Of a stretch of DNA of 64,000 bases, positions 9,707 to 46,331 are shown piece after piece. The notes under the pieces are model-generated. The model saw only the letters and a program-made list of their open reading frames with translations, searched no databases and was not told the DNA's origin. Both the position numbers and the translations under genes were made by a program. Location: contig JBLDXI010000004.1 in NCBI GenBank assembly GCA_047495785.1, forward strand, positions 1,612,001 through 1,676,000. The letters run 5' to 3'. The stretch's first letter is position 1. The number at the start of each line of letters is the position of its first letter. The stretch is from Lepidodermella squamata (taxonomy: Eukaryota; Animalia; Gastrotricha).

Positions 9707-12700
9707 ATGAACAAATGCAATCACTCGCTTCTCGCGTTCGTTTCTACTCTGTTAATGAACGAATTGTGTAACTGCTGCTCACAATCGATTGTTTCAAGAC
9801 AGGTTATTGCAAATTAAATTGCCTTCACTGCTAATTTTTGCTGACAACAGACTGAAAGCCCAGCTGCGTTTCGGCCCTTCGATTCAATTTACGTGATATG
9901 TGTGGATAAGCCAACGAATACAATGCGGTGCAGGCTAGTAACAAACAATAATAATCCATGCCTGGCGTCTGAAACCAAACTGTCTGGGGTATAGACTCTT
10001 AAAATTGATGTATTTGAGCAGCCACCATTTCATAACATCCATTTTGCGACAGGCAATTTATCAAAACCAACGAGTTTGCTCAAACGCAATAACTGATCCA
10101 CCCGTGAGACATTTGATGTGTTTACACTTTTTTATTAATGTCTCTGCAATGCATTGTAAGGTGTGAACCATCATGCAAGAACGATGGCTATTGCAGCAAG
10201 GGGAAATGTGTTTGTACGACAAATTTTGCTGGCTCTGATTGTTCCACTGGTGAGTGAAAACGTTTGAAATCACCTTGATTATTGCCTCATGATTTTAGCT
10301 TTTCCGCAGCCAAGCCAGCCAGCCAGCCAGCCAGAGCCAGCCAAGTGCTCTCCGCCCTGCTTGAATGGAGCAACTTGTGTCGAGACAAACAAATGCTCCT
10401 GCCCGCCCACTTATTCCGGAACCACCTGTGATAGACGTAAGCTTAAAATTGTATAGAATGCTATCGGGATATGGGCAAGGAGTCGTAGCCTGTTAATTTA
10501 ACAAGGGGCGCTTTCGTCGAATTCCCCGTACATCTATTTACGCGAAAGCGATAAATCGGCAGCAGTTGGGGCGCTAATCTTTTTCGATTTTCGTAAACAT
10601 CCCAGTCAGAGAAACATCGGGCGCACTGTTGTCATGTTCTGGATAGGCGAGTGGTAGAAAGAAGCCATTCCCTTATTTAACATTTTGGTTTGTTGTGGGT
10701 GAACAAAGTGTCTAAATTTGTGAACCTTAGTTAACAATCATCAGGAGAAGTAAAATGTAAAAATATATAGCCGAATCAATATTTCATTTAAAAAATTAGT
10801 GGGTACTTATAAATCTTTTTTTCCTCGCGCTTTTTGAATAACTTCGTAACCATGGGGCATTTTTCAATGCGGTTTTCGCCAGTCGATAGATCTAGTCTGA
10901 GGTGAACTTTCCACAAATTGCCGTTAGGATGGGTTTCGGGAGAGAAATCTGATGAGGAAAATGCTGTCCGCGACATTTTGAAAAATTCTCATTTTTGAAA
11001 AATGGCATTCTACAGGATTTGAGGCCGAATGGCATAATCCTGAGGAAAGGCTTCATTGGAAAGTTTTCTTACTGAGAATTGGGTCAATAAAGCGCTGTCA
11101 ACAGGGAAATTCGCCTTAATGGCCACAGAAAAGGGCTTATCCACAAACCGCGATCGGAAAATGATTCAGGCCACATCGAATGAAAATAATTCATTTTTCA
11201 AAAATGAAAAAATCATGCCTAACGCCTAACGCATATTTTGCTTAACTTCTTGAGTGTAAATATGTTTGAAACAAGCTTTTAGGGTTTAGGGGATGTCTGT
11301 ACTTGCACAAAATATTTTGCACAAACTGCATTTTTCAAGCGGAATCAAGTTTAATAAGAAAATTGAATATACCAAATTGAAGGCATAGCCCATGGGCATC
11401 AAAGACCGATTTCGGGCCCTGCTTTCTGAGATATTTTAATGCGTCCGATACGATTTTAAATTACAAGGGGTGGCGAGTTTCACGTTCGGACGTAGGGCAA
11501 TGATGAATTGAAGAAATGAAGCTGAAATCAATCACTCAACGATGCCATGTCCTTTTTTCTGCTACTATCACTCAAGACTGCGCTGCCCTTGTGTTAGACA
11601 GCTTTTTTAGGCATTGAATGATGAAATCCGCTATGAAAATGGAGTTTGTGCAAAATATTTTGTGCAACTGCTTTTGTGCAAAATCGTTTGTGCAAGTACA
11701 GGTAAATCGCTTTTAGGGAATAACCACATCTACTCTTTGATTTGCTGAAACCCGCTTCTTCGCATCACTTATGGTTAAAAGGTTATTCAAAAAAAGCGAG
11801 GCAAAAAAATGTTTGCCCACACTTTAGTAGTTATTGAGGCTAGGAAAAAGAGCTTGAATGAATAGGGACCAAATCCCTTGACTCACTTCTGAACTAACTA
11901 CATTACTTGTTTCTAGTGCAATGCACAAATACGTGTCAAAATGGAGGAACGTGCACGGGTGTCGACACTTGCACTTGCGTCTCCGGATGGAAAGGAGCGT
12001 CATGTTCACAATGTAGAACTTGCTAATATCTTTTCTCGATGAAGTTATTTCTTCTTCGACAGTTGAATGCGTCGTACATGCGTGTATCAACGGCGGAAGT
12101 TGCAGTGGCCCAAACACTTGCACGTGCCTCGCTGGTTGGACAGGTCCGGGTTGCGCGACATCAGAAAGCCAGGTGAGGTAAAATTAGCCTTAATTATTAA
12201 TTAGCGTCTTCGATCTACTAACTTAGTGAGCTAAGCCTAAGAGTTAATCAACTCAGAAATCGACTCGCCGTTGGTTTTTATTTTTGTTCACGAATTTTCA
12301 TTCGTGATTCTTGCCTTAGAGTTGAGTTTTCATGTTTGTCATACCAGGTTCGTGAAATGTACGAGCAGTTGGTGACTAACATTGGTGATACGCCGGATGC
12401 GGCTCAGGTGCGGCGTCTCGTGGCGGACATTGACGCGGCCACTGGAGGCAATTTCAACCCCAACTGGATCGATCCTTATATTATGTTCCCAGGATCATGT
12501 GATCCTATTAGGTTCATGTTCAGCAGAAATGCTACGCTGCTTCATCGCTTGACGGCGTGTGATTCAGCGGGGCAGCAAGCGGATGCAGCGGGGCAGCGGC
12601 TAGAAATCGCTCGGCTGTTTGTAGATCGTGGTGCTGATATTAATGCAATGGCGCAATACCAAACGGCGTTGATGCTCGCGGCCAAAAATGGGCACGTCGA

Positions 12701-13169
12701 AATAGCTCGACTCCTACTTGATCGCAACGCTCCCGTCGATGCGAAGAGCGTAGATGGCATGACGGCGTTCCTGTGGGCGGCCGCGGCGGGTAACGTCGAA
12801 GCAGTTCGACTGCTGCTCGACCGAAACGCTTACATCGAGGCCAAGAGCAACTATAACTGGAGGGCGTTGCATTACGCGGACGGGTCTGGACACGTCGAAA
12901 CAGCAAGACTGCTGCTCGATCGCAACGCTGACATCGAGGCAAAGGGTGACAAGGGCGCGACTCCGCTGTTTGTAGCGGCCTACTATGGGCGCGACGAATG
13001 TATCCGGCTATTGCTCGACAGGGGCGCGAATATCAATGCGAAAAACTACAATGGCTATACATCCCTGGATGTAGCAGTATGCCGAGGCCTAGCCGCATCA
13101 GCCGATCTGCTACGGACACGCGGCGCATTTCAATCAGACCAGCCATGCCCTTCTGATTTCTTTAGCTGA
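9707..13169 (+). CDS. Predicted secreted protein: 4-Cys module + 4 EGF-like domains + Cys-capped ankyrin repeats
   Basis: Exons 9707-9802, 9851-9988, 10053-10103, ~10150/10161-10249, 10299-10436, 11917-12012, 12063-12172, 12348-13169. EGF exons join in phase 1. The last EGF exon ends CAG|GTGAGG in phase 0, matching the ankyrin acceptor CCAG|GTT. The junction after 10103 lacks an in-phase AG and is unresolved. The signal peptide is weak. Confidence 0.72.
11290..11710. mobile_element. Intronic MITE-like inverted-repeat element
   Basis: CTGTACTTGCACAAAATATTTTGCACAAAC near 11297 is mirrored by TTTGTGCAAAATATTTTGTGCAA...TTTGTGCAAGTACAG at ~11645-11701. Confidence 0.55.
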
Positions 13170-13369: not shown

Positions 13370-14090
13370 TTTTATGTAGATTTTGATTAGCTTCAATCTA
13401 ACTGGGATATACGCCCACGTTTTGGAGGGCGGCCCATACTTTTTCTCTGTCGACCAGATCATAGGCTTTTTCGAGGTCTATGAAAACTAAATGTAGTTCT
13501 TTCTTAAACAACATAATTTTTTCGATGATTTGTCGCATGACATAAATACAGTCTCTGGTGCCCTTAAGGGGCTGAAAACCAAATTGTAATTTAGAGATTT
13601 TTGAACCAATCAAAGCTCATTGAATTGAATATTCAATTCGTTCAAGGATAATGGCATACAGTTTTCCTACAACACTGAAGAGGCTTATGCCTCTGTAATT
13701 TTGACATTTTCATTTCTCACCTTTATGTTTATAAATTGGGGTAATTATAGCCGTTGACCATTCTTCAGGGACCCTCTTATCAGTCCAAGCTCGATTCAAA
13801 ATTTCCTTGAGCCATTCAATATTGGCCTCGCTTAAGGCCTTGATCATTTCGGGTCTAATTTCATCTATCCCAGGGGCTTTACCGTTTTTCATGTGGTCGA
13901 TAGCGTTTTTCATTTCGGTGAGAGGAAATTCAGTTACATTTGGATTTTCACCTAAGAAAATGTCGCTGTCGGGGTTATTGGGTTCAAGCCCTTGTAAGAG
14001 ATCCATAAAATAAGATTTCATAACTTCCAAAATTTCATCTATTCCACTGGTAAGTGAACCGTCTTCCTTTTCTAGAGGTTGGGGTTCATT
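13370..14090 (-). mobile_element. Non-LTR retrotransposon (RTE/CR1-like) reverse transcriptase fragment
   Basis: Motifs GKAPGIDEI, PEEWSTAIITPIYK, NYRGISL, QFGF and VFIDLEKAYD across frameshifted ORFs 13710-14192 and 13398-13613. Confidence 0.9.
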
Positions 14091-14319
14091 CAAACTATGA
14101 TTCATTTTTATAGATGTGGATAGAAAAATCGCCAAAAAACCAAGTTCACACATCTCGTGAGAGTGCATATTTTTGGTTTGCAACAAGTTCATTCAACTAT
14201 TAAAATGGAAATAAGCAATCACGTGCAGAAAGTTTGCGAACTTGGTTTTTTGGCGATTTTTCTATCCACATCTATAAAAATGAATCATAGTTTGATGAAC
14301 CCCAACCTCTAGAAAAGGA
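14065..14319. repeat. Inverted repeat with ~83-bp arms
   Basis: 14065-14147 is the near-perfect reverse complement of 14238-14319. Confidence 0.85.
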
Positions 14320-14470: not shown

Positions 14471-15463
14471 TTGGTGAGATCAAATTACCTGGGCGATAAT
14501 TTTGACGAAGAAATAGTGACTTGCACTATCGAAAACTTGGCCAAATCCAAGTTACTTAGAGTCGGCTACATGCACGGCCGAGCATCATGGCACAAATGCC
14601 TGGCCAGGGGCGGATCGGCAGATTACACGCTGTTGTACTCCGCAGTGTGCTTCGCCGGCAGCGATGAGGGCAAGGCGAAACTCGCGAAACTGCTCATCGA
14701 CTACGGCGCTGATCCAAACGCAGGTCTTGCGTGGTCGAGAGAGTGCCGCTGCGACCACACCGTACGAACTACGCCCCTGATAGCCGCGGCTAAGAATAAC
14801 CACGCGAAAGTCGCGAAGGTTTTGCTGGAAAACGGGGCGGATCCTAATTTAGCTGAAGCAATCGGCAATTTCCCACTCACATACGCTGTTAGACTTCGGC
14901 ATTACGAAACAGCTGAGATTCTACTGAAACACGGAGCTGATCCGAATAAGCTGCCTGATAGGACGGAGTACGATGCTTTGACTGATCGCTATAACTTGCG
15001 GGATTTTACTAAATTCACCCAACCGTTGCTGCATTTTGCTGTTAACAATTCTGATAAAGCTATGGTTGAGTTGCTTCTACAACACGGGGCTGATGTGAAT
15101 GGCTACGATGAAGATGAGTTCACGCCGTTGATGCTCGCGGCCTACAACAACAACCAAGCTATGGCGAAAATTCTAATGAAACACGGGGCTGATCTCTTTA
15201 AAACTGATCAAGAGGGTCTGGGCCCATTTGAAATTGCTGCGAGGCGGGAGCATAGGCCGTTGTTGAGGTACCTGCTCGACGAATGCTGTCTGGCTATTGT
15301 TGAGCGGAAGATCAAGCCGCGGCGGAAGTTTAATGTTGTAGGCGTTAAATATAGGGCGGCTGCGATTTCGTCGCATACTTCGGCCAATGTGTGCTTCGGG
15401 TTGATTTTGGAGGGTTACGAGTTCTGGCCGCCGGGTTGCGTTACCCCAACATGGTTTGATTGA
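14471..15463 (+). CDS. Ankyrin repeat protein (uncapped type, 5' end unresolved)
   Basis: Repeated TPL..AA..N......LL..GAD(P/V)N motifs. It lacks the N- and C-caps of the other three ankyrin exons. The ORF starts at TTG, so an upstream exon is likely. Confidence 0.8.
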   Translation: MVRSNYLGDNFDEEIVTCTIENLAKSKLLRVGYMHGRASWHKCLARGGSADYTLLYSAVCFAGSDEGKAKLAKLLIDYGADPNAGLAWSRECRCDHTVRTTPLIAAAKNNHAKVAKVLLENGADPNLAEAIGNFPLTYAVRLRHYETAEILLKHGADPNKLPDRTEYDALTDRYNLRDFTKFTQPLLHFAVNNSDKAMVELLLQHGADVNGYDEDEFTPLMLAAYNNNQAMAKILMKHGADLFKTDQEGLGPFEIAARREHRPLLRYLLDECCLAIVERKIKPRRKFNVVGVKYRAAAISSHTSANVCFGLILEGYEFWPPGCVTPTWFD

Positions 15464-15615: not shown

Positions 15616-18600
15616 TTATATGTTTTTAAGAACAATATAGTTGAAGTAGGCAAAGAGAGCCGCCGTAAGGATGAAAGCTGGGACATCCAGCAGTCTAACC
15701 AAGCTGATTGTTCCTTTACACAGCATTTTCATGCCCCGCTTCCCCTCTACAAAGAAGGAACACGCCAGCCAAAGAGACAGCAAGTTGTAGATTGTGACTC
15801 CGGCCGAGAACCAAGCCATCCATTGAATGTAAGAACTCAAAATTGTGCTATCCGAATTCGGAGCCTGGCTTATGATCTCAGTCTGGCTAACAGCCATTGC
15901 CAGTAGGATAGTCACTGTAAAGGCAGCCCGCTCTGGCATAGCCGGAGCCATCAAAAAAGCAGCCAGGTCCAAACTGCCCAGAATTGCAGTGGGTAAGTAC
16001 AAATTGTTGATGTAGTAGGACGGGTATCTTTTGAAAGTAACTTCATAGACAACAATTGATACGTTATAACCATTGAAAAAAGCCCACGATAGATAACCCC
16101 TAAAATCGGTCACCAGCCACTCGGAATTATCAACGGCATCAATATCCCACAGAAATGTAGGTGAGTCAAGAAAAGAAACCAGAAGATTCGATCGCTGAAG
16201 ACCGAAAACAAACGCGCAGGATTGTTTATCGAAAGGGAACTCCTTCATGCCCAGCGTGCAATCAGCTTTGAATAGGCCCTCTCGGGTCCAATAGAAGTTG
16301 TAAGTCTTATTCGGGCTCACTTTAGCACCAACTCCGTCCATAGTGACCAGAAAATCATCGCCAATCGCGACGTTTTTCATGTAAACATTTGACTGGGCAC
16401 TGTTGATGAAGCGAAGCTGGGGGAGCCAGATTTGATCTGGATGTGCCACATAGATTTGTTCCTTAGGTCTCGTTGCAATCGGGTCTGTTGAATTCTTCGG
16501 GCAAGTTGCTACCGACCATGATAAAAGAACGACCCCGCTAACAGATATCGTGTCATCCGCACTCGATAGCTCATTCAAACCAGGTACATAGAAAGTTATG
16601 TTGATCCGGAGTGGATGTGATTCGTCAATATTGGGAGGGGCGTAACGCGATGCCTCAAAGTGGTCACATCGTTTCAGAACATCTTCGATTGTGTCGAAAG
16701 GTGTGTAAGGCGGTTTTAGCCCATTTGCATCTAATTGGGGCAGGAGACTCTGAGCCGATATATTCGTCCCAATCCTCGATTCTCCATTTGAGGCTTCTAT
16801 TTTTCTGAAAGTCGGCTCTTGAACCAGGTTTGAAACAGGGGCTTTTGATGTGAGCCCAGAATTCGTCGTGGTTTGTCGCTCAGTTGCTGTATTGGTTTTG
16901 GTAGTTATGGTGGTCGGCTCTTGAACCAGGTTCGAAACAGGACCTTGTGATGAGAGCTCAAAGTTAGTGGTTGGTCTGGCAGTTGTCGTGGTGGTTGTGG
17001 TAGCTGTTGAACTTGTTGAAGTCGAAGTGGTGGGCAGCTGATTGCCGCAGATACCAGCCAAAATAACCAATTCATCTGCCGATAACGCAGTTGAATGAAG
17101 GCTGACACAAGCCAATTCATCATTACTGGCCAATGGTACCAAAGTGGAGCCAGAATAGTACATTCCTAACTCAAGGTTCATATATCCTAGATGGAACCTA
17201 AACTCGGTCGAAAAATCAGTAGTCGTACTGGCCAGCGCCACGCTGTTCCATTCATTTTTCCCTCGGTAGCCTAGCAAGGTCCCACTTTCATAGGTGTAGG
17301 CGAAGAATCGCCAGGATTGCGGCTGGTCGTAGGCAACTGGCAGCGATAATTTCTTGTAACCATCCATGAGCCAGCCAGCAAAGGAAAGGGCAGAGTTTTC
17401 GCATTTTACTGTAAAATGCTCAGTGGACAGTATTCCAGATGGTCCGGAGCAAGAGCCCTTGTAGTAGAAAGCGATTGTGTATTCTTTGAAAACTGGCAAA
17501 TTATTGACGACCAGAAGTTGTTTATCAGAAGCAGAATAAGATCCAAAGCTATAGGGTCCACCTTTTTTCGCACTCGGCATCCCGAGCGTAACATCGAATA
17601 AATCAGAGCCAAACTTGTCTATGACGTTCAGCTTTGAATTCATAGTTAAGGGCAAATATGCGATCAAATATTCATTTTTCGGCATTGCTTCGAAATTCGC
17701 CGGAACAAATGAAGGTTTTGGGTACGGCTTTCCACAAGCGTATGGAAGCTTTGCGACTTCAACATCAGCCAAAGCTGTCGAGTAGTAAGTAACACACGAC
17801 AATTCCTGGCCTGGATACATGGTGTAAGTATCCACATCCAAAACCCTAGCTAGGCCGATTCGAACTCGGAAATAGTCGAATATTTCTGTAGCTTCGAGGG
17901 TCAAATTTACGGTTGTGAAGTTGTACATTACTTTCGAATCACTTTCCCGCATAACGAAACCTTTCAGGGTCCGGGTTGGCCAATCGTAAGTATAGGCCAC
18001 GAATTGCCACGTATTGGCCTCATATGCGAGTTTGGCTCTTTCAATAGATATCCATTTGTCATCACCCCTTGATTTGGCAACAATGCCGAGCATCGTATCG
18101 TGGTAGATTGACAATTTTCCAGGCAGAAAGATGCCTTGTTTATCGGAACCACTCGATTTATGGTAGAACGAAACAGTGAACGATGCGGGTTGAATGATCG
18201 AAAGCGATGGACCAGATTGGCCGGATGCTCCTTCAAGCGACCCGAGACCAAATGGGCCTCGAGGGACGATTTTGGCTGTTCCAGGGTCTGTGGGAGTGAT
18301 AACCTGGCCGAATTTATCGAAAAGCGATAGCCCACTTTGCGTAGTGAATGGAGCGTAGAAAACCAAGCTACGTCTCTGGGGCAGATAATCGAAGAAATCC
18401 GGGAGATTGTTTGCCCTTCCATCCTTCCTCCCGCAGCCCTTGACAATTTTCGATATATCACTAAGACTCAGTGCTTCGGAATAATAGCTAACACAGGCGA
18501 TCCACTTTGCTTCCGGGTTTAGAACGACCTCATTCGGCATAGCATCGCCGATTTGAGGATCATCATAGACTGGGAAGATAGGTGATACCAACGCCATGTC

Positions 18601-28154: not shown

Positions 28155-28185
28155 TATGAGTTTAAAGTATTAGGATTATGTATAA

Positions 28186-31018: not shown

Positions 31019-31705
31019 TTTGAGTTTCAAGTAATAAGGATTAAGCTTCTTAAAGCTTTTTTCAATAATAGAGACAAATAATAGTTTGAATGAGGCTTGA
31101 GCTGAATAATTTTAGTTATGTCGTTGGCTCAGCACTCAGCACGCGCAATAAACTGAAATATTCGTATGACTTTAAGTTCAGCTGAATCCGGTGCAAATAA
31201 TGTCGCGAGGTCAGCAATACGAATAAGTCATGGTCAGTTAATGCTGAAGTATTCGCTTCAGCGACTTTATTTATGACCACGAGTAAGTGGGAATTACGTA
31301 AACTCAGTTTTTTATCTGTAAAAGGAGATAGCTGACACTTCAAAGGTAGCCCAGAATCTATATTTACTATATTTACTATATTTATCTATATTTACGGGCC
31401 ATATGAAGCATTGAAAACACATTATACTAATTCCTCACGGCGTAGGTTCGAATTCGTGTTTTAAGTCGGTCTTTCAACCGGATGTTTTCTAACTGGGCTG
31501 ACATTTTTCACGCCAATGGAGTCTGAGTATTGCCAACGCCGTCGTTGAATATTACGTATCTCATCAATATTACAAACTAAGAAAAAATATGAATTTATAC
31601 CTTAATAAACGAATAATACTCGCTGTGTTAAGATGCACATTTACGCGCACACGAAGAAATGTTTATTAAGCCTTTTTGTGGCAATTTATATATGATATTT
31701 ACAAC

Positions 31706-34700
31706 ATGCGCCTTTTCGTAACAAATATAATCGCCTCGTAGTCGTAGGCGTAGTCGTTGCTCAGGATAATGCGATCGGATGCGGCGCTATGAACCCTACA
31801 GCAATGGCGAAATCAACAGGCCCAGGCAGTCACCCAGCAGGAGCACACGAATTTCCGTGGCTGGTTCGCTTCATTTTAATATTAATGCAGTTCAGAACAA
31901 ACAGGATGTCTTTTCAAGGTCTTACTGGAGATAACCTTCAGCGGCGAAAAAGAACCGTCTAACTGCGGCGCTTCTCTCATCTCAAGGCAATGGCTGATAA
32001 CAGCTGCTCATTGCGTTTCGAATGCCGGAGAGACTCCAGTTTCGTTAGTGTTTTTCGAATTCACCCGTTCCATATAGTCTTCTCTTTTATCGCACAGGAT
32101 CACGGCGAAGCTAGGACGCTATAACATCAGCGTGGCTTCAGAGACGGCATCTCACGAATCTTCAGTGTCGCTGCCTCCGTTAGTGCATCGGCTATACGAC
32201 GGCAGTCAAAATTTCTACGACTTTGATTTCGCTCTCTTGCGACTCTTGAGCCCAGTTCCTAGATTTACTCGAGAGATTAAACCGATTTGTCTGCCTGACG
32301 CGGCCACAATGTGCCGAGCCAACTCAGTCACCGCAAATTCGATCGACGGATGCGATTCAGCGGTAGCAGTAGGCTGGGGTTACTTTGCACGCAGTATGTT
32401 CCAGTGTCTACTTTAGTTTTCCTTATCGTAAATTCAACACCCGTGGTTCAAATCTTGTTTATATGTCTACAGAAATTCATAAGTTTCAACGGTATCCCAG
32501 TTTTTCCAGCAGTCTGCAGGAAACAAAACTTACTGCTTTTATATTGTCACTCGAACCCATGGAATGTAAACCATCACAGTGGATGTAGTAAGACGATCGA
32601 GGTTTATTTATGTTAGGGTATCTTTCAGACCTGAATTTATCTGACCAAGTGGTCCTGTGGTTTTTGTGATTCTGACCTGGACCTTCAGATGTGAGGCCCG
32701 TACCCTTCTTACCTATCGCGATTCGCTCACTCATACGGCATATATAATTGGGAGCAGAGTTAGTTGGGATAGGAATATTGTAGTTTAGGAAGATAGACTG
32801 GATTCATTTGCAATATTAACAAAATCACATTAACAGATCCGTAACAGAGCCGCAACAGCCTCTGATTCTTTTATCAGGAAAAAAATATTATCAAAACAAT
32901 GCTAAAAAATTTCAATAAAAATTATTAGTAATCACGAAAAACCAAGAATACTATCTGTTATCAGACATAGCCTAAACCCTACATAGCTTTTTTGTAATTC
33001 AGCTAAACTATCTAAGATAGCAAAGCATCCGGCCTTGTTAAATAGCCTAAACGTTTCCTATGTAATATTAAAGCTAAACTATCTGAGATCCCGAGGAAAC
33101 TGGATCTTCGGGTTCGTTCGTATCGAAATTGCTCGCTAGAGTATTCCCGCATGCGCTCTGAATCGGTCACCATCACCGACTCGAAAATGTGCCTAGCCGC
33201 TGGCAACAGCAGCGACGTTTGTCTGGGCGATTCTGGAGGCCCTTTAATGTGTATGAAATCGATGCAGATTTACCTGCTTGGCATAATTTCGAATGGCGAT
33301 GGGTTTTGCCAGGGATCCATTCCTGGCATCTACAGCAGAGTCTGCAAGATTCTCGATTGGATCACGGAAAACACTGATGTTCGCAGACAGACAACTACTC
33401 CACAGCAGTCGTGTACAGTACCAAACATAACAGCGGGTTTTGTGACCCGCGTGGACCCGGAAACTTCGGAAGATACTGGCGAAGTTCTAAGACCTGGAAC
33501 TGCTGTGGAAAGAGGAGAGGCTGTTAGCGTGAAGTGCAACCTTGGTTATACCTATTCGTCCTCTGTCTCTATTGCTTCATGTTTTCCCCCATTGAGACCG
33601 GCGATAAACGGAAGGTGTAACCCGATAAGTAAGTAAAATCATGTCTTTTAAGTTGAGAGTTAATGGCTATTATCAAGACTGCGACCCTGTTCCTGTATTG
33701 AGTAACGGCTTTTGGACGGGTTCTAACAGATCTGCATCGCACTTGTCCACGATGACGTTGGTCTGCAATCCAGGCTTCAAAGTCGTCGGCCGGAGTACAA
33801 GTCAGTGCCAAGCAAACGGCAGCTGGTCTGCGGCTGGTAGCTGTGAGGCATAGGTGAACTTATTTTACAGCCAAATGAGGGTGTAAGAACAACGTTTATT
33901 CACTATGTGCGCTTCGTTAAACGCGACGCGCACGGCAGACTTCGTTTCCGAAGTTACATTTAGGAAAATGCCAATGTGCAATGTAGGATAGATTCAAAAA
34001 TCAAATTTTCCATTAGGTTTTCTGCCGCAGGCCGCAGTTAACCTTCTCGAAAAATTGAAAAATTGACATCCATGTTGAACTATGAAAAGATCGAAGTAAT
34101 ATATTTACGAAAAGGTGGAGATTTGAGCAATAGTTTCTAACAATTAAGAATAGCTTTCACTCTCACGTCCCAAATGCGTGAAACACAAAGCATTGTCACT
34201 TCTATTTCTTGATTTCTATAATAAATGAAAATTCGTGTGATGAAGACTGCGGCTCTGGTCCTGCGTTAACCAACGGCTTTTGGACTAGTTCTAACAGATC
34301 CACAGCGTACTTGTCGACGATGACATTGGTCTGCAATCCAGGCTTCGAACTCGTTGGCCGGAGTACAAGTCAATGCCAAGCAAACGGCATCTGGTCTGCG
34401 GCGGGTAGCTGCGACCAAATAGGTTAATTACATCTTTCAATAATTCACCATTCTTTCAACTAAATGAGAATTCGTATGATGAAGACTGCGGCCCCGCTCC
34501 TGTATTGGATAATGGCTATTTCACGAGCCCCACCACTGCTACGTCTTATTTGTCCTTGTTGACGTTGGAGTGCAATCCGGGCTTCAAGGTTGTTGGCCAA
34601 ACTACAAGTCAATGCCAAGCTAACGGCAGCTGGTCCCCGGCTGGTCGCTGTGACCCAATAGGTGAATTATTTTCAATTCATCATCGATTTTCAAATGAAA

Positions 34701-37700
34701 TAATGATATATAGTTTGTGTTCCGCCGCCCAAAATACAAAACGGCTACGTATCCCCCGGTCAATCGAGCGTCGGAGCCTCTCGAACCATATCATGCAATT
34801 CGAATTTCTTAATTCAAGGAAATGCTGTCATATCGTGCCTTTCAAGCTTAGCCTGGTCCCAGCCTGGTTCTTGCGTCTTGAGACAGCGAAGACCTGTAAG
34901 TTTTGTCGATTTTGTCGATCTGATCGCATATTTGAAGAAATTATATTATATCGTTAGCGGCGCGCCAAAACAACCACTTTACTATTTATAGATTTTATAT
35001 GGATAGTACGATCGAGAGTAGAAAAAAATCAGTGCTCAAATGGCCTATCGTACTTTATCATTACGCTCGGCGACTTCAAGTACGATCGAATGAATCATCT
35101 AAGTGGTTGTTTGGGCGCGCCGCTAATGATATCTAGCTTTAATTTGATATCAAATTCATCCAATTCAGGTTTTGTAATCGCTTACGGCGAACCTTCGAAG
35201 ATCGAGTAAATCCTTAGGTAGAAAAAAGTAAACAAATGAAGAAGCTAGAGGTTTACTAGAGGTTTATTCCAGTAGACCTAGAGTTCTGTAGATCGTGCAC
35301 AGTTCTAAAAGGCGAAATATTCTTCCAAAATGACTGTTTTATGGCATATCGTCGATCCTATTACAGACAGGATCTGTGGTCTATTGGCATCGATATTGCG
35401 GGGGTCCACATTTAACCATACGATCTACGTATAAGTATGGTAAAAGGAAAGGTACGATGAGGTCGAGCCCATACGATCTATCCCAGTGATTGCCGATCTA
35501 TTAGACTGGATCTACAGGCATCCATCGCGAGTATGTCCTAATTCTACCATGCGATCTACATAGGATCGAACACATACGATCTATCCCAGTGTCAAATTTA
35601 GATCCAGTCATGGTCTACTTTTTTTGACTGGGTAAAGCCCTACCCACTGGTTTTCAAGTAAAAAGTAGAACTGCCGTTATTATTGCCATCAGTCCCATAG
35701 GTTCCCCCCGCCCTGCTGCGGCAGCTATGCTGCTGCTGTTGCCATTATACAGTAGTTCCTCCCTCAGCGGTACGACGACGGTAAAACACTACGGTACGGT
35801 ACCACAGTAGTTTCTCAAAATAAACGTTCTTCTAGGGTCTGTTCACAAACAATTCCATTGTAGTACTTTCATGTGTATTTCCGACAGTACATCATTAGCA
35901 AATCGAATTAGTTTGTGCACAGCCACATTGGGAATATTCGATATTCGTGCTAGTACTTTTATGTTTGCAGAAAAAAACATCCATAGTACTTTCATGCGAG
36001 AGCTCAAGAAAAAAACGTTATACATGTTTATACTAAGGTCGTTAGCCGAATTGAATATTGCAATTAAAAGGTCAATTAAAGAAGAAAGACCCAGTTACCA
36101 ACCGAGAAATGTCGCCTAATTTGACATCAAATTCAAGCATGGATTGGAAATTCTTTGACGCGTTCATTTTTGGATAGAAATTTGTATTTGAAATATCTTT
36201 AGATCAAAATAAAATTATTTTGGCTGGGGGTTGTAATTGGAAAATTAGTCGGCTCAATAAAGCATATTAAATTGAAGCTGATCATAATCCAAGTCTCCGT
36301 GGATTTTTTTAGCCAAATCGAAGATGAAGCTATATGATTTCAATGTTACATAAGTTAAATTTTTCGGTTGATCACTGAGCACTTTTTCCAGTACATTGAC
36401 TATTACTTTAATCAAGTGATTTCTTCCATCGCGCGAAAAAAGCATAAAATAGTGATGAATCATCCCGGCACACACAATGCGCTTTGAGACGCGCCGTATG
36501 AAAAGGGACCTTGTAGTTTCCGTTGTGTCACACAATTGAGGTGACTACCATACGACACGTCTCATTTATATATCTATGATTTAAGCGATATTTTAACAAT
36601 AATATGAATCTTCGTCCTCTTCATTTTATTTTTACAAAATTATTATTTTTTGTAGTTGTTGCTTTTTTCTGAATTGACCCCTAGACATGAAAGTTTCTAG
36701 AAACCAGAAAGAGAAACTGAGAAAGAGAAACCAGCATTCATCCACAAAACACAATCCACAAAAGCATTCAAACACAAAACTAACATTCCAAAAACCTAAA
36801 TAACAAAAACGTGAAAATATGACACTTTCGAAAAACTGGAATGTCCAAAACTGCGCGATGGCTTAGTAAGAGATCGTATCAGATGGAGATTAAGCATTGA
36901 GAGTTCAAAACTGAACACTTTTCCTACCTACGGTATCATACTATACGGCATAATGTTCATTATGTTCATTACGCTAGAACTACGGTAAAGCTACGGTCAT
37001 GTGACGTAGACGTGGAGCTCAGAGATTTTTTGCATTAGCTACACAGATCACGAATATTCAGAAATTCGGCCCGGCCTCTGCATCAAAACAATGATGAATC
37101 GAACAATATATTCCGCGATTATTCCAGGCAATTATTCGAGGTAGTCCCGCGTCAACACCTCCGTCACATGGCTGCGGTAGAACTGCGTTAAGAACTACGG
37201 ATCGCCACATTCAGAAAATGGGGCCTATACTAATAGGCTATAGGCGAGTCACATTATCGGCAATTACGCATTATGACCATAAGCATGAAACAAAAATATT
37301 TATTTGCGCCCTGGCAATCTGAGCAACCTGAGCAACCTGGACGAAAACGTGGGAGTGCGGGGACTGATCGCACGGCCCGCATATGTTTTTTTCGCCGCAC
37401 ACACATACGCGAACGGCATACAATGCTCAACTGCACGGGGTCGGGTTCCAGACCCGTGAAATTATCGAGGGAAATCCCTCGAATTCCCAGGGAAACAGTT
37501 AACAAGGGATTTGCGTTTTTTTGCTTTAAACAGATGGTGCCGCACGACCGCTCAGAGTCCAAAAAAGAGTTGCAATTAAAGAGGGAGTGTTGATAGCGGG
37601 GGTGCAGTTATCGAGGAGCACTGATTAGTTGATTACTTGCAAATACTTGCTAATTGCTAATAATGTCTTATTGCATTTAGGTCAGTGAAGTGTACGATCA

Positions 37701-38355
37701 ATTGTGGAACGTATCAGCCTCGACAGACGACATGGCGCAGGTGCGGCAGCTCGTTGCGGAGATAGACGATTCCACTGGCGGGAAATTCGACCCGAACTGG
37801 CGAAACCCGAAAATGGTCAACTGTGGTGCGTGGCCCACGACGAATGGCAGCCTGCTGCACAGTGTTACGTGCAATCAGACGCAATCAGACCAGCGATTGC
37901 AAATTGCTCAGCTGTTCGTCGATCGTGGAGCCGATGTAAATTCCAGGGAAAATTACTATGGCCAAACGGCATTGATCATTGCGGCTGCGAACGGGCAAGT
38001 CGAAGTAGTTCGACAGTTGCTGGATCGCAACGCCGCCATCGAGGCCAAGGATAAAGAAGGCGAGACGGCGTTGATAGGCTCGGCTTATCGTGGGCAAGTC
38101 GAGGTAGTTCGGCTGTTGCTGGATCGCAACGCTAAAATCGAGGCCAGGGATAACAATGGCGATACGGCGTTGATAGGTTCGGCTTATCGTGGGCGCATCG
38201 AAGTAGTTCGACTGTTGCTGGATAAAGGTGCGAATAAGAATGCCAGAAGTACAGTTGGCAAGACAGCTCTCGATTACGTGATATGCAGCAACCTAAACGC
38301 AGCGGCCGATTTGCTGAGGTCGCGAGGAGCAAGTCGAGCAAAACCATATTGTTGA
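31706..38355 (+). pseudogene. Trypsin-like serine protease + 5 CCP/Sushi + Cys-capped ankyrin repeats, copy 1 (two frame lesions)
   Basis: Exons 31706-31863, 31919-32043, 32098-32393, 33074-33627, 33678-33853, 34246-34422, 34485-34661, 34714-34895, 37681-38355. Catalytic triad TAAHC / DFALL / GDSGGP. A frameshift in the signal peptide (TAG at 31739) and a 1-nt loss at ~33851. The link to the ankyrin exon is inferred from phase 0 and from copy 2. Confidence 0.78.
34948..35132. mobile_element. MITE with ~32-bp TIRs
   Basis: ATATCGTTAGCGGCGCGCCAAAACAACCACTT / AAGTGGTTGTTTGGGCGCGCCGCTAATGATAT. Confidence 0.75.
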
Positions 38356-41130: not shown

Positions 41131-41960
41131 CCTGGTCGAGAAGGTCGAGAAGAGTTAGCAAAAATGTGAAGCAGTGGATATTTTATTAATTGCTGTGTAT
41201 TAGATATACGCATGTATGTGGCACCCGGGCACTAGAAATAGGAAATATACAAAATTCGTAATTAATAATTTTGCGGAAGCATCAGCTGAAATCCGATTGG
41301 GCAGCTAATTTATCTAAAACGATAAGTATCATGAGTTTTCACATTGAATTTTAAATTAAATTAAATGACCGGTCGAAATTGAATGAAATAGGAGAGAATA
41401 GTAAAAGAGCGTGTAGAAGAGAAATAGTTAGCACGTCAAAGCATTCTCGATGGAGTCTACACTCTAAATGATCTAACTTGATGTCAATGAACGCGAATAG
41501 AAACACGAAAACAGGCATGATGCGGACCGTTTTTTATGGGGCTATTGCTCTTTTACCTGCTTCCGAGTGGTCAAAATCAGAGTCTCATCTATGCTCTCTG
41601 CGTTATTTAAGGGGTCAAACTGATGATAAGACGACCAGGGAACAGCTATAGGTATCAATTTTCGTGCCGAGTTCTTTACGGCCTTATCGAAGACTTGAAA
41701 ACACCTCCTGGCTTAGGTTCGAATTCATTTTTTAGTCGATTGGATGTGTTCAAACTGGTTTGAAATTTATTACGCCAATGAAAATTGCCAACGCAGTCTT
41801 TCACATATCTCACCAATATTACATACTAACAGAGAAAAAAGATGAATTGAAACCTTAATATACGAAAAATACTCGCTGCTTTTAGCTGCACGTTTACGCG
41901 AACACGAAGAAATTTTTATTAAGCCTTTGTTGTGGCAGATTTTCTTGTGAAATTTGTAAA

Positions 41961-44900
41961 ATGCGCCTTTTCGTAGCTAATATAATCCCTTTGCTTGTGT
42001 TGGTATCCGGAGTAGTCGTTGCTCAAGACAATGCGATGGAATGTGGTGTTGTGAACCCGACACAAATGGCAAAATCAACAGGCCCAGGCAGTCAACCAGC
42101 AGGAGCACACGAGTTCCCGTGGCTTGTTCGTTCAGATTTAACATTAATGCAATTCAGAATAAGCAGGGTTTTTCAAGGTCTTACTTGAGATAACCTTCAT
42201 CGGCGAAACAGAAGCCGAATACTGCGGAGCTTCTCTCATCTCGAAGCAATGGCTGATTACCGCTGCTCATTGCGTTTGGAATGACGGAAAAACTCCGATC
42301 TCGTTAGTGTTATAGTGCATTCGTCGTTTCGGCAGTCGTCTTATTGTTTACGTACAGGATCACGGCCAAGCTAGGTCGCCATAACATCAGCGTCGCTTCA
42401 GAGACGGCGTCTCACGAATCTTCAGTGTCGCTGCCACCTTCGGTACATCGGCTCTACAACGGCAGTCAGAACTTCTACGATTTTGATTTCGCTCTCTTGC
42501 GGCTGTTGAGCCCCGTCCCTGGGTTCTCGCAGCAGATCAAACCGATTTGTTTGCCTGACTCGGCTACCATGTGTCGAGCCAACTCTGTCACCGCCAATTC
42601 AATTGATGGATGCGATTCCGCGGTTGCTGTTGGCTGGGGTTACTTTAAAAGCAGTATGTTTAATTATTTCTGTACTTGAATGTATTAAGTGGGGTTCAGA
42701 AACTCGTGTGTAAACTACACATTCATGATTCATCGTTCTTTTCTTATGCGCAAAATTCATCTTTTGCAAAAAACGGTCGAGAAGCCATTTGAATCATGAA
42801 CGATGAACGATAGCCTTTCACAAATTATTTGTCATAATTCATGATTCAAATAGCGATTTTTTGCGTGCGTATATTTGTGTTGATCGAAAAAAACGAAGCC
42901 GCCACTGAGCACAGAACCCATGATGTTGGTTTAGCACGGCCAGAGCTAAACCACTATGCCACTAGCAAGCTTCGGTGATTGCGGGTGTTTCTGTCATTAT
43001 CTTCCATTTAAGCCATTGACTTGCGCAGTATCAAAACTGCAAAACTAGCCATTGTAGAAGATGGACATTTTGCCGAAAGGGGGATATAGGTAAGGGTCCC
43101 CCCCCCCCCTTATATCGCTCAAGTTTCCGCAGGGTTCAGGGAAAAAATCATAAGGGTTAGGCTTCGATCCCGAGGGCTCGAAGCAGGGACTAGAGTGCTC
43201 TAGTCAAAGATAAAGGTCAAATGATTTCGATTTATTGAAATAGGTTTTGAAAATAATTGAATTTTTAACGAATTTTTCCAATTGCTCAGAATATCAAAGT
43301 CAACAGCGAGAATTAGGAGATGATGACGTAAAAGCCTTAATCAACAAAAGCTCACTGGTGGCACAGTGGCTTTAACTCCGAACTATCATGCCCAGTGTCA
43401 TGGGTTCTGTGCCCTGCGGCCGCGGTCCTTTTTTGACCATAATCGCGCACAAAAAAAAATGGCTAAACAGCTTCTTGAATCATGAATTATGACAAATAAT
43501 TTGTGAAAGGGTTTCGTTCATCGTTCATAATTCAAGTGAGCCTGCAAAAAATCTTTTACATCATTCATGTGGAAAACACGAGTTTGTGAATCGCCCTTTA
43601 CAATGTACAATTACTATGTACAACCAAAATTGGAAAGCAATGTACAACCAGCGATTTTCGCAGTCATAGTATGTACGGGAAGACACTCCGTTTTTATCAA
43701 TTCAAAAACGTGTTTTATCCAAAGTTACAGTGTAGAAGATGGGCATTTTACCGGGATATCTAGGTAAGGGGCTAGATTTGACACTGGAAATAAATCTGGT
43801 TGAAGAAACAGATCATTCGTCGCATGTGGTCTTTTTCTCTATCATATCGTGTATTGCCTCGATTAGTTATGGCTTTTATTCTAACTGCAGCCTTCTATTC
43901 GAATTTTAAAGAATTCGGTATAGCGAAGCATCCGGCTTTTTTAAATAGCCTAATATTTCAGCTAAACTATCTGAGATCCCGAGGAAACTGGATCTCCAGG
44001 TTCGATCGTATCGAAATTGCTCGCTGGAGTATTCTCGCTTGCGTTCGGAATCGGTCACCATCACCGACTCGAAAATGTGTTTAGACGCTAAGGGCAGCAG
44101 CGACGTTTGTTATGGTGATTCTGGAGGCCCTACCATGTGTTTGAAATCGATGCAGATTTACCTGCTTGGCTTAATTTCGAATGGCGATGGGTTTTGCCAG
44201 GGATCCATTCCTGGCATCTACAGCAGAGTCTGCAAGGTTCTCGATTGGATTTCAAACAACACCGATGTTCGCATACAGACGACTACGCAACAGCAGCCGT
44301 GTGTCGTACCAAATATCGCATCGGGATTTGTGACCAGAGTGGACCCGGAAACTTCAGAGGATACCGGCGATGTTCTAGGGCCTGGAACTGCTGTGGAAAA
44401 GGGCGGGGCTGTTAGCGTTAAATGCAACCCCGGTTACACTTACTCGTCCTCTGTCACCATTGCTTCGTGTTTCCCTCCATTGAGACCGGCGATAAATGGA
44501 AGGTGTGACCCGATAAGTAAGTGATTCAGGTCTTCTAAATTTAGATATTATGCTTATGATAAAGGCTGCGGTCCCGCTCCTGTATTAAGTAACGGCTTTT
44601 GGACGGGTTCTAACAGATCCGCATCGTACATGTCCACGATGACATTGGTGTGCAATCCGGGCTTCCAACTCGTTGGTCAGAGTACAAGCCAATGCCAAGC
44701 AAACGGAAGCTGGTCTGTGGCTGGTAGCTGTGAAGCAGCAGGTGACTCATTTTCAGTCCTTTTCGATGCTTCTATTAAATTAGCGTGTAAAGTTTGTCGA
44801 CCACCGCCCTCGATACAGAACGGATACATATCCCCTGGCCAATCGAGCGTCGGAGCTACTCGATCCATTTCATGCAACATGAACTTCGACATTCGAGGAA

Positions 44901-46331
44901 ACGCTACAATTACGTGCCTATCCAACTTAGTCTGGTCCCAGCCTGGTTCATGCGTTTCGAAAAGAACTGTAAGTATTTCACGAAAATCAACCACCAAGCA
45001 GTTGCGCGTTAATTCCACATAACATCACACCTCCAATTGTGATTCGCGCACAATAATTTATAGGGTAAAAAATTACCGCTTTCACGGCTGCTCGAAAGAT
45101 CGCCTGAAATCAGCTGGGCGGATAGGACGATTTTTTACAAGCGGATTTGAAAATCGTGATACAGGCCTTCGAAAACCGCTCGAACTGCCGTCACAAATTC
45201 TCCCGCAGATAAATAATTCCGCCATGAAAGGGTTAACCTGGGTAATAAAGGGTTTTATTGGTAAGAACAGGGCAAGGTAACCTAATTCTGCATGATAAAT
45301 GCCAAGGTGTTAGCGAATAGCCAGAAGAATTAGGCAGGATGAAGTCGAAGATGGACCTTTCGCTGGGAGAGAGGAATGATAGTGATTTCCTCGCTCGCTC
45401 GCTCGATTATGTACTCTTAAAGCTTCAGTCAATTTTTCGATTGGCAGGCCATATTTTATTGAATAAAAACAATATAGCGGAGTAAGCGATCGGTATTTCT
45501 ACGCTATTTGGACTGAATTTTGTGCGCACACGACTGAGACTCTTGCTGACCGCATGGAATTGTTTCGGGAGAGCTGCGACAGTCGCATGCTGATTCACCG
45601 ATGTAACCACCGATTCCGTATTCCCACATTAAATGTTCAACCCAAAATTATAAATAATGATTAATTCATTTCGTATTACAGTTACGCACGGCGGAAAGTC
45701 AACTTGCTAACAATGTTCTCACATTTAGGTTTATGAAATGTACGTGCAGTTGTGGAATGTAACAGCCTTTACGGGCGACGTGGCGCAGGTGCGGCAACTC
45801 GTTGCGGATATCGACGAATCCACTGGCGGCAAGTTCGACGCTAACTGGCGCAGCCCAAATGCCTACAATTGCTACATTCGTGGATCTGGTATTACTTTGA
45901 TAAATGGCATCCTGCTGCACAGTGTTATGTGCGGTGCTATGAACGCCACACAGACGCAATCGGACCGGCGATTGCCAATTGCGCAGCTGTTCCTGGATCG
46001 TGGAGCTGATGTGAATTACAGAGATAATTACTATGGCTGGTCGGCGTTGATATTGGCGGCTATGAATGGGCAGGTCGATGTAGTTCGACTGTTGCTAGAT
46101 CGCAAAGCTGACATCGAGGCTAAGGATAAAAATGGCTGGACGGCGTTGATGCATGCGGCCAGGTGGGGGCAAGTCGAAGTGGTTCGTTTGTTGCTGGATA
46201 GAGGCGCAAATAAGGATGCTAGAGATTCAGACGGCAATGCAGCTCTCGATTTGGCGATTTGCAACGACAAAACCGATGCAGCCAATTTGCTGAGGTCGCG
46301 GGGAGCAAGTCGAGCGAAGTCCTCTTGTTAA
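41961..46331 (+). CDS. Secreted trypsin-like serine protease + 3 CCP/Sushi + Cys-capped ankyrin repeats, copy 2 (predicted 698 aa, intact)
   Basis: Exons 41961-42125, 42178-42302, 42358-42653, 43962-44516, 44565-44741, 44793-44968, 45729-46331 total 2097 nt, all GT-AG and in frame. Signal peptide, intact triad, Asp at the S1 position (SDVCYGDSGGP), no TM segment. Confidence 0.82.
42690..43596. mobile_element. Intronic fold-back element with tRNA-like arms
   Basis: 42789-42849 is inverted at 43475-43535, and 42909-42972 is inverted at 43348-43414. The latter has A-box-like TGGCACAGTGG and B-box-like GGTTCTGTGCC. Confidence 0.65.

What the first reader, a model, noticed from the sequence alone, without database searches (positions are those of the whole stretch)
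9707..46331. Shuffled, disulfide-capped ankyrin cassette on different secreted proteins: natural extracellular DARPin-like binders
Seen: three homologous terminal exons (12348-13169, 37681-38355, 45729-46331) each begin at a phase-0 AG. They share an N-cap VxE(M/V)YxQL..D.AQVRxLVA(D/E)ID..TGG.F..NW, then a highly variable loop bracketed by two conserved Cys (GSC..TAC, VNC..VTC, YNC..VMC). Next come 4, 3 or 2 repeats with a constant LLLDRxAxIEAK framework and variable turn/helix-1 residues. The C-cap has a second Cys pair (VCRG..QPC, ICSN..PYC, ICND..SSC). In each case the nearest upstream gene ends at an otherwise unpaired phase-0 donor (12172 after EGFs; 34895 and 44968 after CCPs) and has an N-terminal signal sequence with no TM helix. 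Known: ankyrin repeats are overwhelmingly intracellular, and the positions varying here form the binding face randomised in DARPins. Inference: a secreted recognition module diversifying by repeat number and surface residues, exon-shuffled onto different effectors (immune recognition, adhesion or toxin targeting).
Basis: partly seen in the sequence, partly recalled or inferred. Interest (0 to 1): 0.88.

Follow-up and report, generated by a model that had tools for sequence, protein, structure and literature searches.

The report
Secreted, cysteine-capped ankyrin module family
An unidentified small animal genome carries about a hundred copies of an ankyrin-repeat exon, a binding module that normally works inside cells. 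Here it is joined to export signals and extracellular domains and looks adapted for life outside the cell, but no RNA or protein data yet prove this.

Summary
The three ankyrin exons are real, homologous and intact. Each opens at a phase-0 AG and has no start codon of its own. They belong to a cassette family with about 103 copies in this 121-Mb genome and no relative among 1.84 billion public protein representatives.

Evidence for a secreted module:
- Wherever I could trace an upstream partner, it was an extracellular domain or an export-signal exon: trypsin-CCP, CCP alone, EGF, C-type lectin, or a bare signal-peptide exon. The partner I could check ended at a phase-0 donor. Five of the joining introns are only 153-260 nt.
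- Internal repeats are almost cysteine-free (0.09% against 1.33% in ordinary ankyrin proteins).
- 21 of 29 complete cassettes have exactly four cysteines, at fixed cap positions.
- N-glycosylation sequons are twice the shuffled expectation.
- The model is confident (pLDDT 95) and its nearest solved structures are DARPins.

- Gene 2's signal-peptide exon is frameshifted as assembled.
- Gene 1 needs a donor at 9765, and its signal peptide is weak.
- dN/dS at the DARPin library positions is about 1.1, so positive selection is not shown.
- Cassettes cluster by head type, so the shuffling is old.

The only public run is genomic DNA, so there is no RNA evidence. Cysteine distances could not be measured. 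The scan has already noted this family many times elsewhere in this genome.

The parts
9707..9765 (+). Gene 1, tentative first exon: 20-aa leader with a weak signal-peptide-like core; donor GTGTAA in phase 2
   Evidence: Among hydrophobic-core ATG ORFs within about 3 kb upstream, the nearest to the exon with a phase-2 GT donor; the ORFs at 9407 and 9539 also have phase-2 GT sites. The full model gives an open 437-aa frame.
10161..12172 (+). Gene 1, four EGF exons (10161-10249, 10299-10436, 11917-12012, 12063-12172), ending at phase-0 donor CAG|GTGAGG
   Evidence: Pfam EGF/hEGF/EGF_2 matches near threshold on the two exon ORFs scanned, 10289-10453 and 12020-12178. Exon phases worked out.
12348..13169 (+). 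Gene 1 ankyrin cassette (273 aa plus stop): N-cap, Cys-bracketed loop, 3 internal repeats, C-cap with Cys pair
   Evidence: The intron 12173-12347 is only 175 nt.
31707..31742 (+). Gene 2 first exon, start of the signal peptide, frameshifted: ATG, 11 codons, then TAG
   Evidence: Sequence. Alignment to the gene 3 5' end shows a 7-column gap.
31886..34895 (+). Gene 2 trypsin-like domain and five CCP modules, ending CVLRQRRP|GTAAGT (phase 0)
   Evidence: ORFs. Pfam Trypsin on 33151-33633.
37681..38355 (+). Gene 2 ankyrin cassette (224 aa plus stop). Conserved Cys at residues 48, 64, 202 and 224 (nt 37822-24, 37870-72, 38284-86, 38350-52)
   Evidence: AlphaFold2 model with a 24-paralogue alignment, pLDDT 95.1. 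Nearest solved structures are DARPins, TM 0.78.
41961..44968 (+). Gene 3 head: signal peptide exon (41961-42125), trypsin-like exons (42178-42308, 42358-42653, 43962-44516, the last including CCP1), CCP2 (44565-44741) and CCP3 (44784-44968), ending CVSKRT|GTAAGT in phase 0
   Evidence: The spliced model is open for 703 aa. Kyte-Doolittle 19-residue maximum is 2.61 at residues 3-21 and the next highest is 1.43. The His (TAAHC), Asp (DFALL) and Ser (GDSGGP) motifs are present. Pfam Trypsin and Sushi.
45729..46331 (+). Gene 3 ankyrin cassette (200 aa plus stop), the shortest form with 2 LLLDR repeats
   Evidence: The intron 44969-45728 holds no signal-peptide-like or TM-like ORF.

Best explanation
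The three exons are the last exons of secreted mosaic proteins. Each encodes a self-contained ankyrin solenoid. It consists of two degenerate N-terminal repeats carrying a hypervariable loop stapled by a Cys pair, then 2 to about 19 near-consensus repeats, then a C-cap with a second Cys pair. The exon is spliced in phase 0 behind an export signal plus extracellular head domains: EGF in gene 1 and trypsin-like protease plus CCP modules in genes 2 and 3. Elsewhere in the genome the head is a C-type lectin, CCP modules alone, or just the signal-peptide exon.

The module has been adapted to the secretory pathway. Free cysteines are purged from the repeats, an even number of cap cysteines is kept (probably two intramolecular disulfides), and N-glycosylation sequons are conserved.

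Its concave face and N-cap loop vary freely while the framework is under purifying selection. It most likely acts as a variable ligand-binding arm that brings the attached head to a target.

Shown: the exon anatomy, the family size, the head types, and the Cys, sequon and variability statistics. Inferred: the splicing, secretion, disulfide pairing and binding function. As assembled, gene 2 has lost its signal peptide and may be a young pseudogene.
For: - The cassettes cannot stand alone. Conserved coding starts exactly at an AG, there is no conserved Met, and this holds in about 103 mostly intact copies.
- In 38 sampled cassettes, the traceable upstream neighbour on the same strand was always an extracellular head or a signal-peptide exon, ending at a phase-0 GT donor wherever one was checked. 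These are 17-19 CCP-type, 4 EGF, 1 C-type lectin and 2 bare signal-peptide exons. Two further copies have the signal peptide fused onto CCP remnants after loss of the protease exons.
- Five joining introns are only 153-260 nt (L010, W1, L036, L008, L028). That leaves no room for a promoter plus first exon, or for a TM exon.
- The gene 3 model is an open 703-aa frame with a classical signal peptide and no other hydrophobic span.
- Internal repeats hold 4 Cys in 4554 residues (0.09%), against 1.33% in 120 generic ankyrin proteins. 21 of 29 complete cassettes have exactly 4 Cys.
- Where the helix Cys of the C-cap is absent, in 3 of the 4 EGF-type copies and the lectin-type copies, the tail carries two Cys instead. 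In L014 both C-cap Cys are lost together.
- There are 136 N-x-S/T sequons against 62.7 +/- 7.3 after shuffling.
- Framework dN/dS is 0.36-0.48, so the exons are under selection. At the DARPin positions it is 1.09.
- The fold is confident, and its closest solved structures are DARPins.
Against: - There is no transcript evidence. The only public run holding this DNA is genomic: about 75x depth, with introns covered.
- Head-only transcripts are possible. Read-through of the donors reaches a stop after 2 codons in gene 1 and 17 in gene 3, and the gene 3 intron contains an AATAAA near 45463.
- Gene 2's signal-peptide exon is frameshifted, and gene 1's leader is weak.
- Signal peptides were judged by hydropathy only.
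- Disulfide geometry is untested.
- For about 10 sampled cassettes no head was found within 1.5-5.5 kb.
Confidence: 0.75

Rival explanations
1. Head genes and ankyrin cassettes are separate transcription units. Each cassette is spliced to a small first exon of its own that I did not detect, with or without a signal peptide. The adjacency to EGF and CCP genes only reflects co-duplication of neighbours.
For: Bare signal-peptide exons do feed cassettes directly in L009 and L030. Long introns in gene 2 (2785 nt) and other copies could hide such an exon, and weak candidates exist at 35330 and 36604. About 10 cassettes have no head within reach.
Against: Five copies have introns of 153-260 nt, with no room for a promoter and first exon. 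The head's last exon lacks a stop and ends at a conserved GTAAGT in phase 0 across diverged paralogues. The gene 3 intron has no candidate exon.
Confidence: 0.12
2. The proteins are type-I membrane receptors, Notch-like in gene 1. The EGF or CCP part would lie outside and the ankyrin domain inside the cell, with the TM helix encoded by a missed mini-exon.
For: EGF repeats followed by ankyrin repeats recall Notch, and ankyrin domains are normally cytosolic (established knowledge).
Against: No TM-like ORF with splice sites lies in the joining introns of genes 1 and 3. No hydrophobic span appears in the assembled models. Introns of 153-260 nt cannot hold an extra exon. Cys depletion, Cys parity and excess sequons inside the ankyrin part argue for a lumenal or extracellular location.
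Confidence: 0.04
3. The cassettes are decaying relics of a burst of duplications and are no longer expressed.
For: Gene 2's 5' end is frameshifted. Some copies are truncated or have lost the C-cap (L009, L014, L015). One neighbour's N-cap is frameshifted (L041).
Against: Nearly all of about 103 copies keep open frames of up to about 950 aa. Framework dN/dS is 0.36 and the cap cysteines and sequons are conserved.
Confidence: 0.05

Closest known systems
DARPins (designed consensus ankyrin repeat binders)
   Same: Same fold: the best Foldseek matches are DARPins, with TM 0.78 over 213 of 224 columns and 30-37% identity. The framework is near-consensus, and variability is concentrated at repeat positions 2, 3, 5, 13 and 14, which are five of the six library positions. 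DARPins also work outside cells.
   Different: These are natural and germline-encoded. DARPin position 33 is conserved here, while positions 1, 10 and 16 vary. The caps carry Cys pairs and N-glycan sequons, whereas DARPins are Cys-free by design. The N-terminal part holds an extra hypervariable loop. Repeat number reaches about 19.
alpha-latrotoxin family (spider venom proteins with about 20 ankyrin repeats)
   Same: An animal ankyrin-repeat protein that acts outside the producing cell (own knowledge; PMC13611351 uses the term extracellular ankyrin).
   Different: Pfam sees only Ank families in the cassettes, with no latrotoxin domain. Here there are a signal peptide, EGF/CCP/lectin/protease heads and Cys caps. 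The N-cap profile found no relatives in public proteins.
Notch/LIN-12 (EGF repeats plus ankyrin repeats)
   Same: EGF modules and ankyrin repeats sit in one polypeptide (gene 1).
   Different: No TM helix lies between them. There are only four EGFs, and the ankyrin part carries secretory-type Cys and sequon features.
Complement and clotting modular serine proteases (MASP, C1r/C1s, horseshoe-crab factor C)
   Same: A trypsin-type domain with an intact His/Asp/Ser triad is combined with CCP modules behind a signal peptide.
   Different: The order is reversed, with the protease first and the CCPs after it. No R|IVGG activation site is visible and no CUB domain was found. The C-terminus is an ankyrin array.
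Secreted ankyrin effectors of oomycetes and intracellular bacteria
   Same: Ankyrin repeat proteins that leave the producing cell. Oomycete ANKs are described as a secreted effector class (PMC11139960).
   Different: Those act inside host cells and are not joined to EGF, CCP or lectin modules. Here the partners are obligate extracellular domains of an animal.

Membership tests
Ankyrin repeat superfamily (Pfam Ank, Ank_2) | HMM match above the curated cut-off | tested here: met
   Ank scores 92.8-122.4 bits against a cut-off of 21.1, and Ank_2 scores 94.5-124.8 bits against 27.3, for all three exons.
Ankyrin repeat superfamily (Pfam Ank, Ank_2) | Helix-turn-helix and beta-hairpin solenoid fold | tested here: met
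   AlphaFold2 pLDDT 95.1 and pTM 0.91. Foldseek top 50 hits are all ankyrin or DARPin structures, E about 1e-11.
DARPin-like binder (works-like comparison, not a natural family) | Constant framework with variability at positions 2, 3, 5, 13, 14 and 33 | tested here: inconclusive
   Entropy exceeds 2.6 bits at positions 2, 3, 5, 13 and 14. Position 33 is conserved (K in 82%), while positions 1, 10 and 16 also vary. dN/dS at the six positions is 1.09, interval 0.77-1.65.
Classical secretory protein | N-terminal signal peptide | tested here: inconclusive
   Judged by hydropathy only. Gene 3 is clear: Kyte-Doolittle 19-residue value 2.61 and a V-x-A cleavage motif. Gene 1 is weak. Gene 2 is frameshifted. 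No SignalP-type tool was available.
Classical secretory protein | No transmembrane segment after the signal peptide | tested here: met
   After the leader, the highest Kyte-Doolittle 19-residue values are 1.43 (gene 3) and 1.25 (gene 1). The joining introns of genes 1 and 3 hold no usable TM exon.
Classical secretory protein | Disulfide-bonded cysteines (paired and spatially close) | not testable with these tools
   The model's coordinates are not returned, so distances could not be read. Indirect support: Cys parity, co-loss or replacement of partners, and a 15-fold Cys depletion in the repeats.
Notch/LIN-12 receptors | TM helix between the EGF repeats and the ankyrin domain | tested here: not met
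MASP/C1r-type complement proteases | CCP modules N-terminal to the protease, with an R|IVGG activation site | tested here: not met
   The gene 3 model has the protease first, followed by three CCPs, and no IVGG motif.
alpha-latrotoxin | Latrotoxin-specific N- or C-terminal domains | tested here: not met
   Pfam finds only Ank families in the cassettes and Trypsin, Sushi, EGF and Lectin_C in the heads.

The most novel reading that the evidence does not exclude
This animal lineage has turned the ankyrin solenoid into a germline-encoded, extracellular, disulfide-capped and glycosylated variable binding scaffold of about a hundred genes. The scaffold serves as the recognition arm of secreted proteases, lectins and EGF proteins. 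That would make it a natural counterpart of DARPins and a further independent solution to variable extracellular recognition, beside Ig domains and LRR-based receptors.
Probability: 0.25. Interest if true: 0.9.

Novelty: new variant of a known kind. Interest (0 to 1): 0.72.

Why it matters
Ankyrin repeats are textbook intracellular modules. Their use outside cells is known from engineered DARPins and a few toxins.

A large natural family that carries its own stabilising features would matter in three ways. Those features are cysteine caps, purged free thiols and glycan sites, together with attachment to proteases, lectins and EGF modules.
- It would show that evolution found the same scaffold that protein engineers chose.
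- It would give ready-made designs for disulfide-stabilised, secretion-competent ankyrin binders.
- It would point to an undescribed recognition system in a poorly known animal lineage.

The family has no detectable relatives in public protein collections and I found it in no paper.

Tried and rejected
- RNA evidence. Laying it on 41900-46400 showed genomic DNA with introns covered and no splice joints.
- Whole-exon homology search. It was swamped by generic ankyrin proteins, with no close relative.
- N-cap profile against 1.84 billion representatives. Five weak multi-stretch hits to giant ankyrin proteins, none at E<1e-30.
- ESM Atlas on the N-cap. Only generic bacterial ankyrin clusters.
- Single-sequence AlphaFold2. 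Poor result, pLDDT 60 with the N-cap below 50. I replaced it with the alignment-based model.
- Cys-Cys distances. No tool returns coordinates and /data holds no model file.
- Organism identification through the intronless sulfotransferase. The best named hits are about 30% identical molluscs and arthropods, so this was uninformative.
- Literature. Two full-text searches found secreted ankyrin effectors of pathogens and a latrotoxin review, and no animal EGF/CCP-ankyrin family.
- A larger census of upstream regions. Smaller requests gave 15 extra loci.
- Furin-type R-x-[RK]-R motif before the junction. It is present in 10 of 16 CCP-type copies. It is followed by Pro, so I do not claim cleavage.
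Full report
**Observation**

The three blocks at 12348-13169, 37681-38355 and 45729-46331 translate without stops into 273, 224 and 200 residues and end at stop codons. Pfam calls ankyrin repeats in all three, with Ank/Ank_2 E-values from 1e-27 to 1e-36. Each block begins directly after an AG.

They share several features:
- a conserved N-terminal stretch;
- a variable loop between two conserved cysteines;
- 4, 3 or 2 repeats with an LLLDR-type framework;
- a C-cap with a second cysteine pair.

They are CAG|GTGAGG at 12172 after the fourth EGF exon, CCT|GTAAGT at 34895, and ACT|GTAAGT at 44968 after the last CCP exon.

**Family**

The window's genome is 121 Mb in 151 contigs. It holds about 103 matches to the 71-residue N-cap at E<1e-6. 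Nearly all are in open frames of 190 to about 950 residues, and in almost all of them homology starts at residue 1-4 of the query. Conserved coding therefore begins exactly at the acceptor. There is no conserved Met in the first residues, so the cassette cannot be a gene of its own.

A profile of 27 N-caps searched against 1.84 billion protein representatives found only five weak hits to giant generic ankyrin proteins, and none at E<1e-30. The cassette is lineage-specific as far as public data go.

The copy count may be somewhat inflated. Several pairs are identical or 96-97% identical across their flanks and could be haplotigs.

**Gene models in the window**

Gene 3 assembles with canonical GT..AG introns of 42-1308 nt into one open 703-residue frame. 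It reads signal peptide, then a trypsin-like domain with the His, Asp and Ser motifs present, then three CCPs, then the ankyrin cassette. The only hydrophobic span is residues 3-21, with a Kyte-Doolittle 19-residue mean of 2.61; the next highest is 1.43. Pfam confirms Trypsin and Sushi. The 760-nt joining intron holds no signal-peptide-like or TM-like ORF.

Gene 1 assembles into an open 437-residue frame with four EGF modules. Its first EGF exon starts one base before a codon boundary, so the first exon must end in phase 2. The ATG at 9707 fits only with the weak donor GTGTAA at 9765/9766. The leader it gives is only weakly hydrophobic. The joining intron is 175 nt.

Gene 2 has a trypsin-like domain and five CCPs, but its first exon is frameshifted as assembled. 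The ATG at 31707 runs into TAG after 11 codons, and the hydrophobic core and the rest of the exon continue in another frame with no Met. It is either a young pseudogene or an assembly error.

**Comparative support for the join**

No RNA is available. The one run that holds this DNA is genomic, with about 75x depth and introns covered. I therefore used the paralogues as a test.

In 38 sampled cassettes I looked at 1.5-5.5 kb upstream on the same strand:
- 17 to 19 have a CCP exon. It ends in a conserved C-x-x-R-Q-R-R-P followed at once by GTAAGT in phase 0, and the sequence diverges after the donor.
- Four have an EGF exon: W1, L018, L032 and L034.
- One has two C-type lectin domains (L036; Pfam Lectin_C, E about 1e-13), ending ...CESYVP|GTGAGT.
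- Two have only a signal-peptide exon that ends in phase 0 (L009 and L030).
- In L022, and in L031 upstream of L014, the signal peptide is fused straight onto CCP sequence. The protease exons have been lost but the frame, the donor and the cassette are kept.

Five joining introns are 153-260 nt long, too short for a promoter with a first exon or for a TM mini-exon. Every head I could trace is an obligate extracellular domain or an export signal.

A maximum-likelihood tree of the first 115 residues places all 14 CCP-linked cassettes assigned at that point in one clade (support 100/98). The lectin-linked copies form another clade (98/93). Three EGF-linked copies group together, and W1 sits on a long branch. 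The module was therefore moved between heads a few times long ago, and whole genes then duplicated. The shuffling is not ongoing.

**Signs of adaptation to the secretory pathway**

- The 138 full internal repeats contain 4 cysteines in 4554 residues (0.09%). The 120 generic ankyrin proteins have 1.33%, and an ordinary ankyrin ORF in the same window (14471-15463) has 9 in 331.
- 21 of 29 complete cassettes have exactly four cysteines, at the four cap positions.
- Where the helix cysteine of the C-cap is missing, the C-terminal tail carries two cysteines instead. This is so in three of the four EGF-linked copies (L018, L032 and L034) and in the lectin-linked copies.
- In L014 both C-cap cysteines are gone together.
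- W1 and L018 shift both N-cap cysteines in step.
- N-x-S/T sequons number 136, against 62.7 +/- 7.3 after shuffling. That is three times the density in the generic ankyrin proteins. Conserved sites sit in the N-cap (WNxT, NGT) and often just after the cap cysteines.
- Cassette G+C (51-55%) matches other exons in the window, so nothing suggests foreign DNA.

**Structure**

Folding gene 2's cassette alone gave a poor model. With 24 paralogues as the alignment, the model is confident throughout, with pLDDT 95.1 and pTM 0.91. Its best matches among solved structures are DARPins and other ankyrin proteins, with TM 0.78 over 213 of 224 columns. The N-cap is therefore two more, degenerate, ankyrin repeats.

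By register, the second and third conserved cysteines both sit at repeat position 13, at the end of helix 1 of the first true repeat and of the last repeat. The first cysteine lies in the preceding hairpin loop and the fourth is the last residue of the tail.

I could not measure the Cys-Cys distances, because no tool returns coordinates.

**Variability**

Across the 138 repeats, entropy exceeds 2.3 bits at DARPin positions 1, 2, 3, 5, 10, 13, 14 and 16. Eighteen positions are at least 84% conserved. Five of the six DARPin library positions are among the variable ones, and position 33 is not.

In 51 disjoint nearest-neighbour repeat pairs, Nei-Gojobori dN/dS gave these values:

| Position set | dN/dS | Bootstrap 95% interval |
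|---|---|---|
| Six a-priori DARPin positions | 1.09 | 0.77-1.65 |
| Remaining 27 positions | 0.48 | 0.40-0.60 |
| Eight most variable positions (circular choice) | 1.57 | 1.18-2.17 |
| Remaining 25 framework positions | 0.36 | 0.29-0.45 |

The face evolves at about the neutral rate or faster while the framework is constrained. Positive selection is not demonstrated, and gene conversion among repeats may distort these numbers.

The N-cap loop is 5-10 residues long and differs in all 30 cassettes examined. W3 and L002 have 96-97% identical flanks yet differ by two whole repeats, which shows that repeat number changes quickly.

**Explanation and rivals**

The best reading (confidence about 0.75) is a secreted, Cys-capped, glycosylated ankyrin binding module joined in phase 0 to extracellular heads.

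The rivals are:
- separate transcription units with an undetected first exon (0.12);
- a missed TM exon that would put the ankyrin part inside the cell (0.04);
- dead relics (0.05).

Head-only isoforms remain possible. Read-through of the donors stops after 2 codons in gene 1 and 17 in gene 3, and an AATAAA lies in gene 3's intron.

**Comparison with known systems and novelty**

The module works like a DARPin, but it is natural, capped by cysteines and glycosylated. It is not Notch-like because there is no TM helix. It is not a MASP-type protease because the domain order is reversed and there is no IVGG site. It is not latrotoxin-like because no such domains are present.

Two full-text searches found only secreted ankyrin effectors of oomycetes and bacteria, plus a latrotoxin review.

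Earlier notes of this scan describe the same family on many other pieces of this genome. I used them as leads, and I confirmed the bare signal-peptide-exon architecture and the lectin-head architecture myself. One note calls such genes expressed, and I could not check that.

Noticed in passing
window 14471-15463 (+): A 330-aa ankyrin ORF of the ordinary kind. It has no family N-cap and carries 9 cysteines scattered through the repeats. It serves as an in-window contrast to the Cys-free cassettes.
   Followed up: partly
window 31700-31760: Gene 2's signal-peptide exon carries a frameshift relative to gene 3, seen as a 7-column gap in the alignment. This is either a young pseudogene or an assembly indel.
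   Followed up: partly
window 34872-34895 and paralogue junctions: The last CCP exon usually ends in R-x-[RK]-R followed by Pro (10 of 16 copies). This looks like a furin-type motif just before the ankyrin module, but Pro in the next position makes cleavage doubtful.
   Followed up: partly
window 45455-45470: An AATAAA lies inside the gene 3 joining intron, so a head-only transcript by alternative polyadenylation is conceivable.
   Followed up: no
window 44229-47828 versus L002 (G000:C64:503022-506522): The flanks are 96-97% identical and the intron 90%, yet the cassette has two extra repeats in L002. These are recent duplicates or divergent haplotigs. Several other copies are identical pairs on different contigs, so the count of about 103 may be inflated.
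   Followed up: partly
window 7201-7992 (-): A 263-aa ORF with a signal-peptide-like start and a Cys-rich unit repeated three times, containing GDDT-x-x-NG. From memory it looks like a VMO-I-type beta-prism protein.
   Followed up: no
window 58905-59858 (+): An intronless cytosolic sulfotransferase (PF00685). The best named relatives are only about 30% identical (molluscs, arthropods). Two unnamed ENA metagenome proteins are 55% and 45% identical. The host is far from any annotated genome.
   Followed up: partly
window 13398-14192 (-) and L015, L016, L040: Reverse-transcriptase fragments of retrotransposons lie just downstream of gene 1 and inside or next to several paralogues' joining introns.
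   Followed up: no
L041 (G000:C73:347936-351900, minus strand): A complete neighbouring protease-CCP-ankyrin gene whose N-cap is frameshifted. The next cassette (L012) lies about 2 kb behind its stop, with no head of its own in between.
   Followed up: no
window 2036-6445 (+), 15616-20547 (-), 48213-49460 (-): Giant Cys-loop channel genes with long N-terminal repeat regions, and a short intronless relative. Other findings on this window cover them.
   Followed up: no
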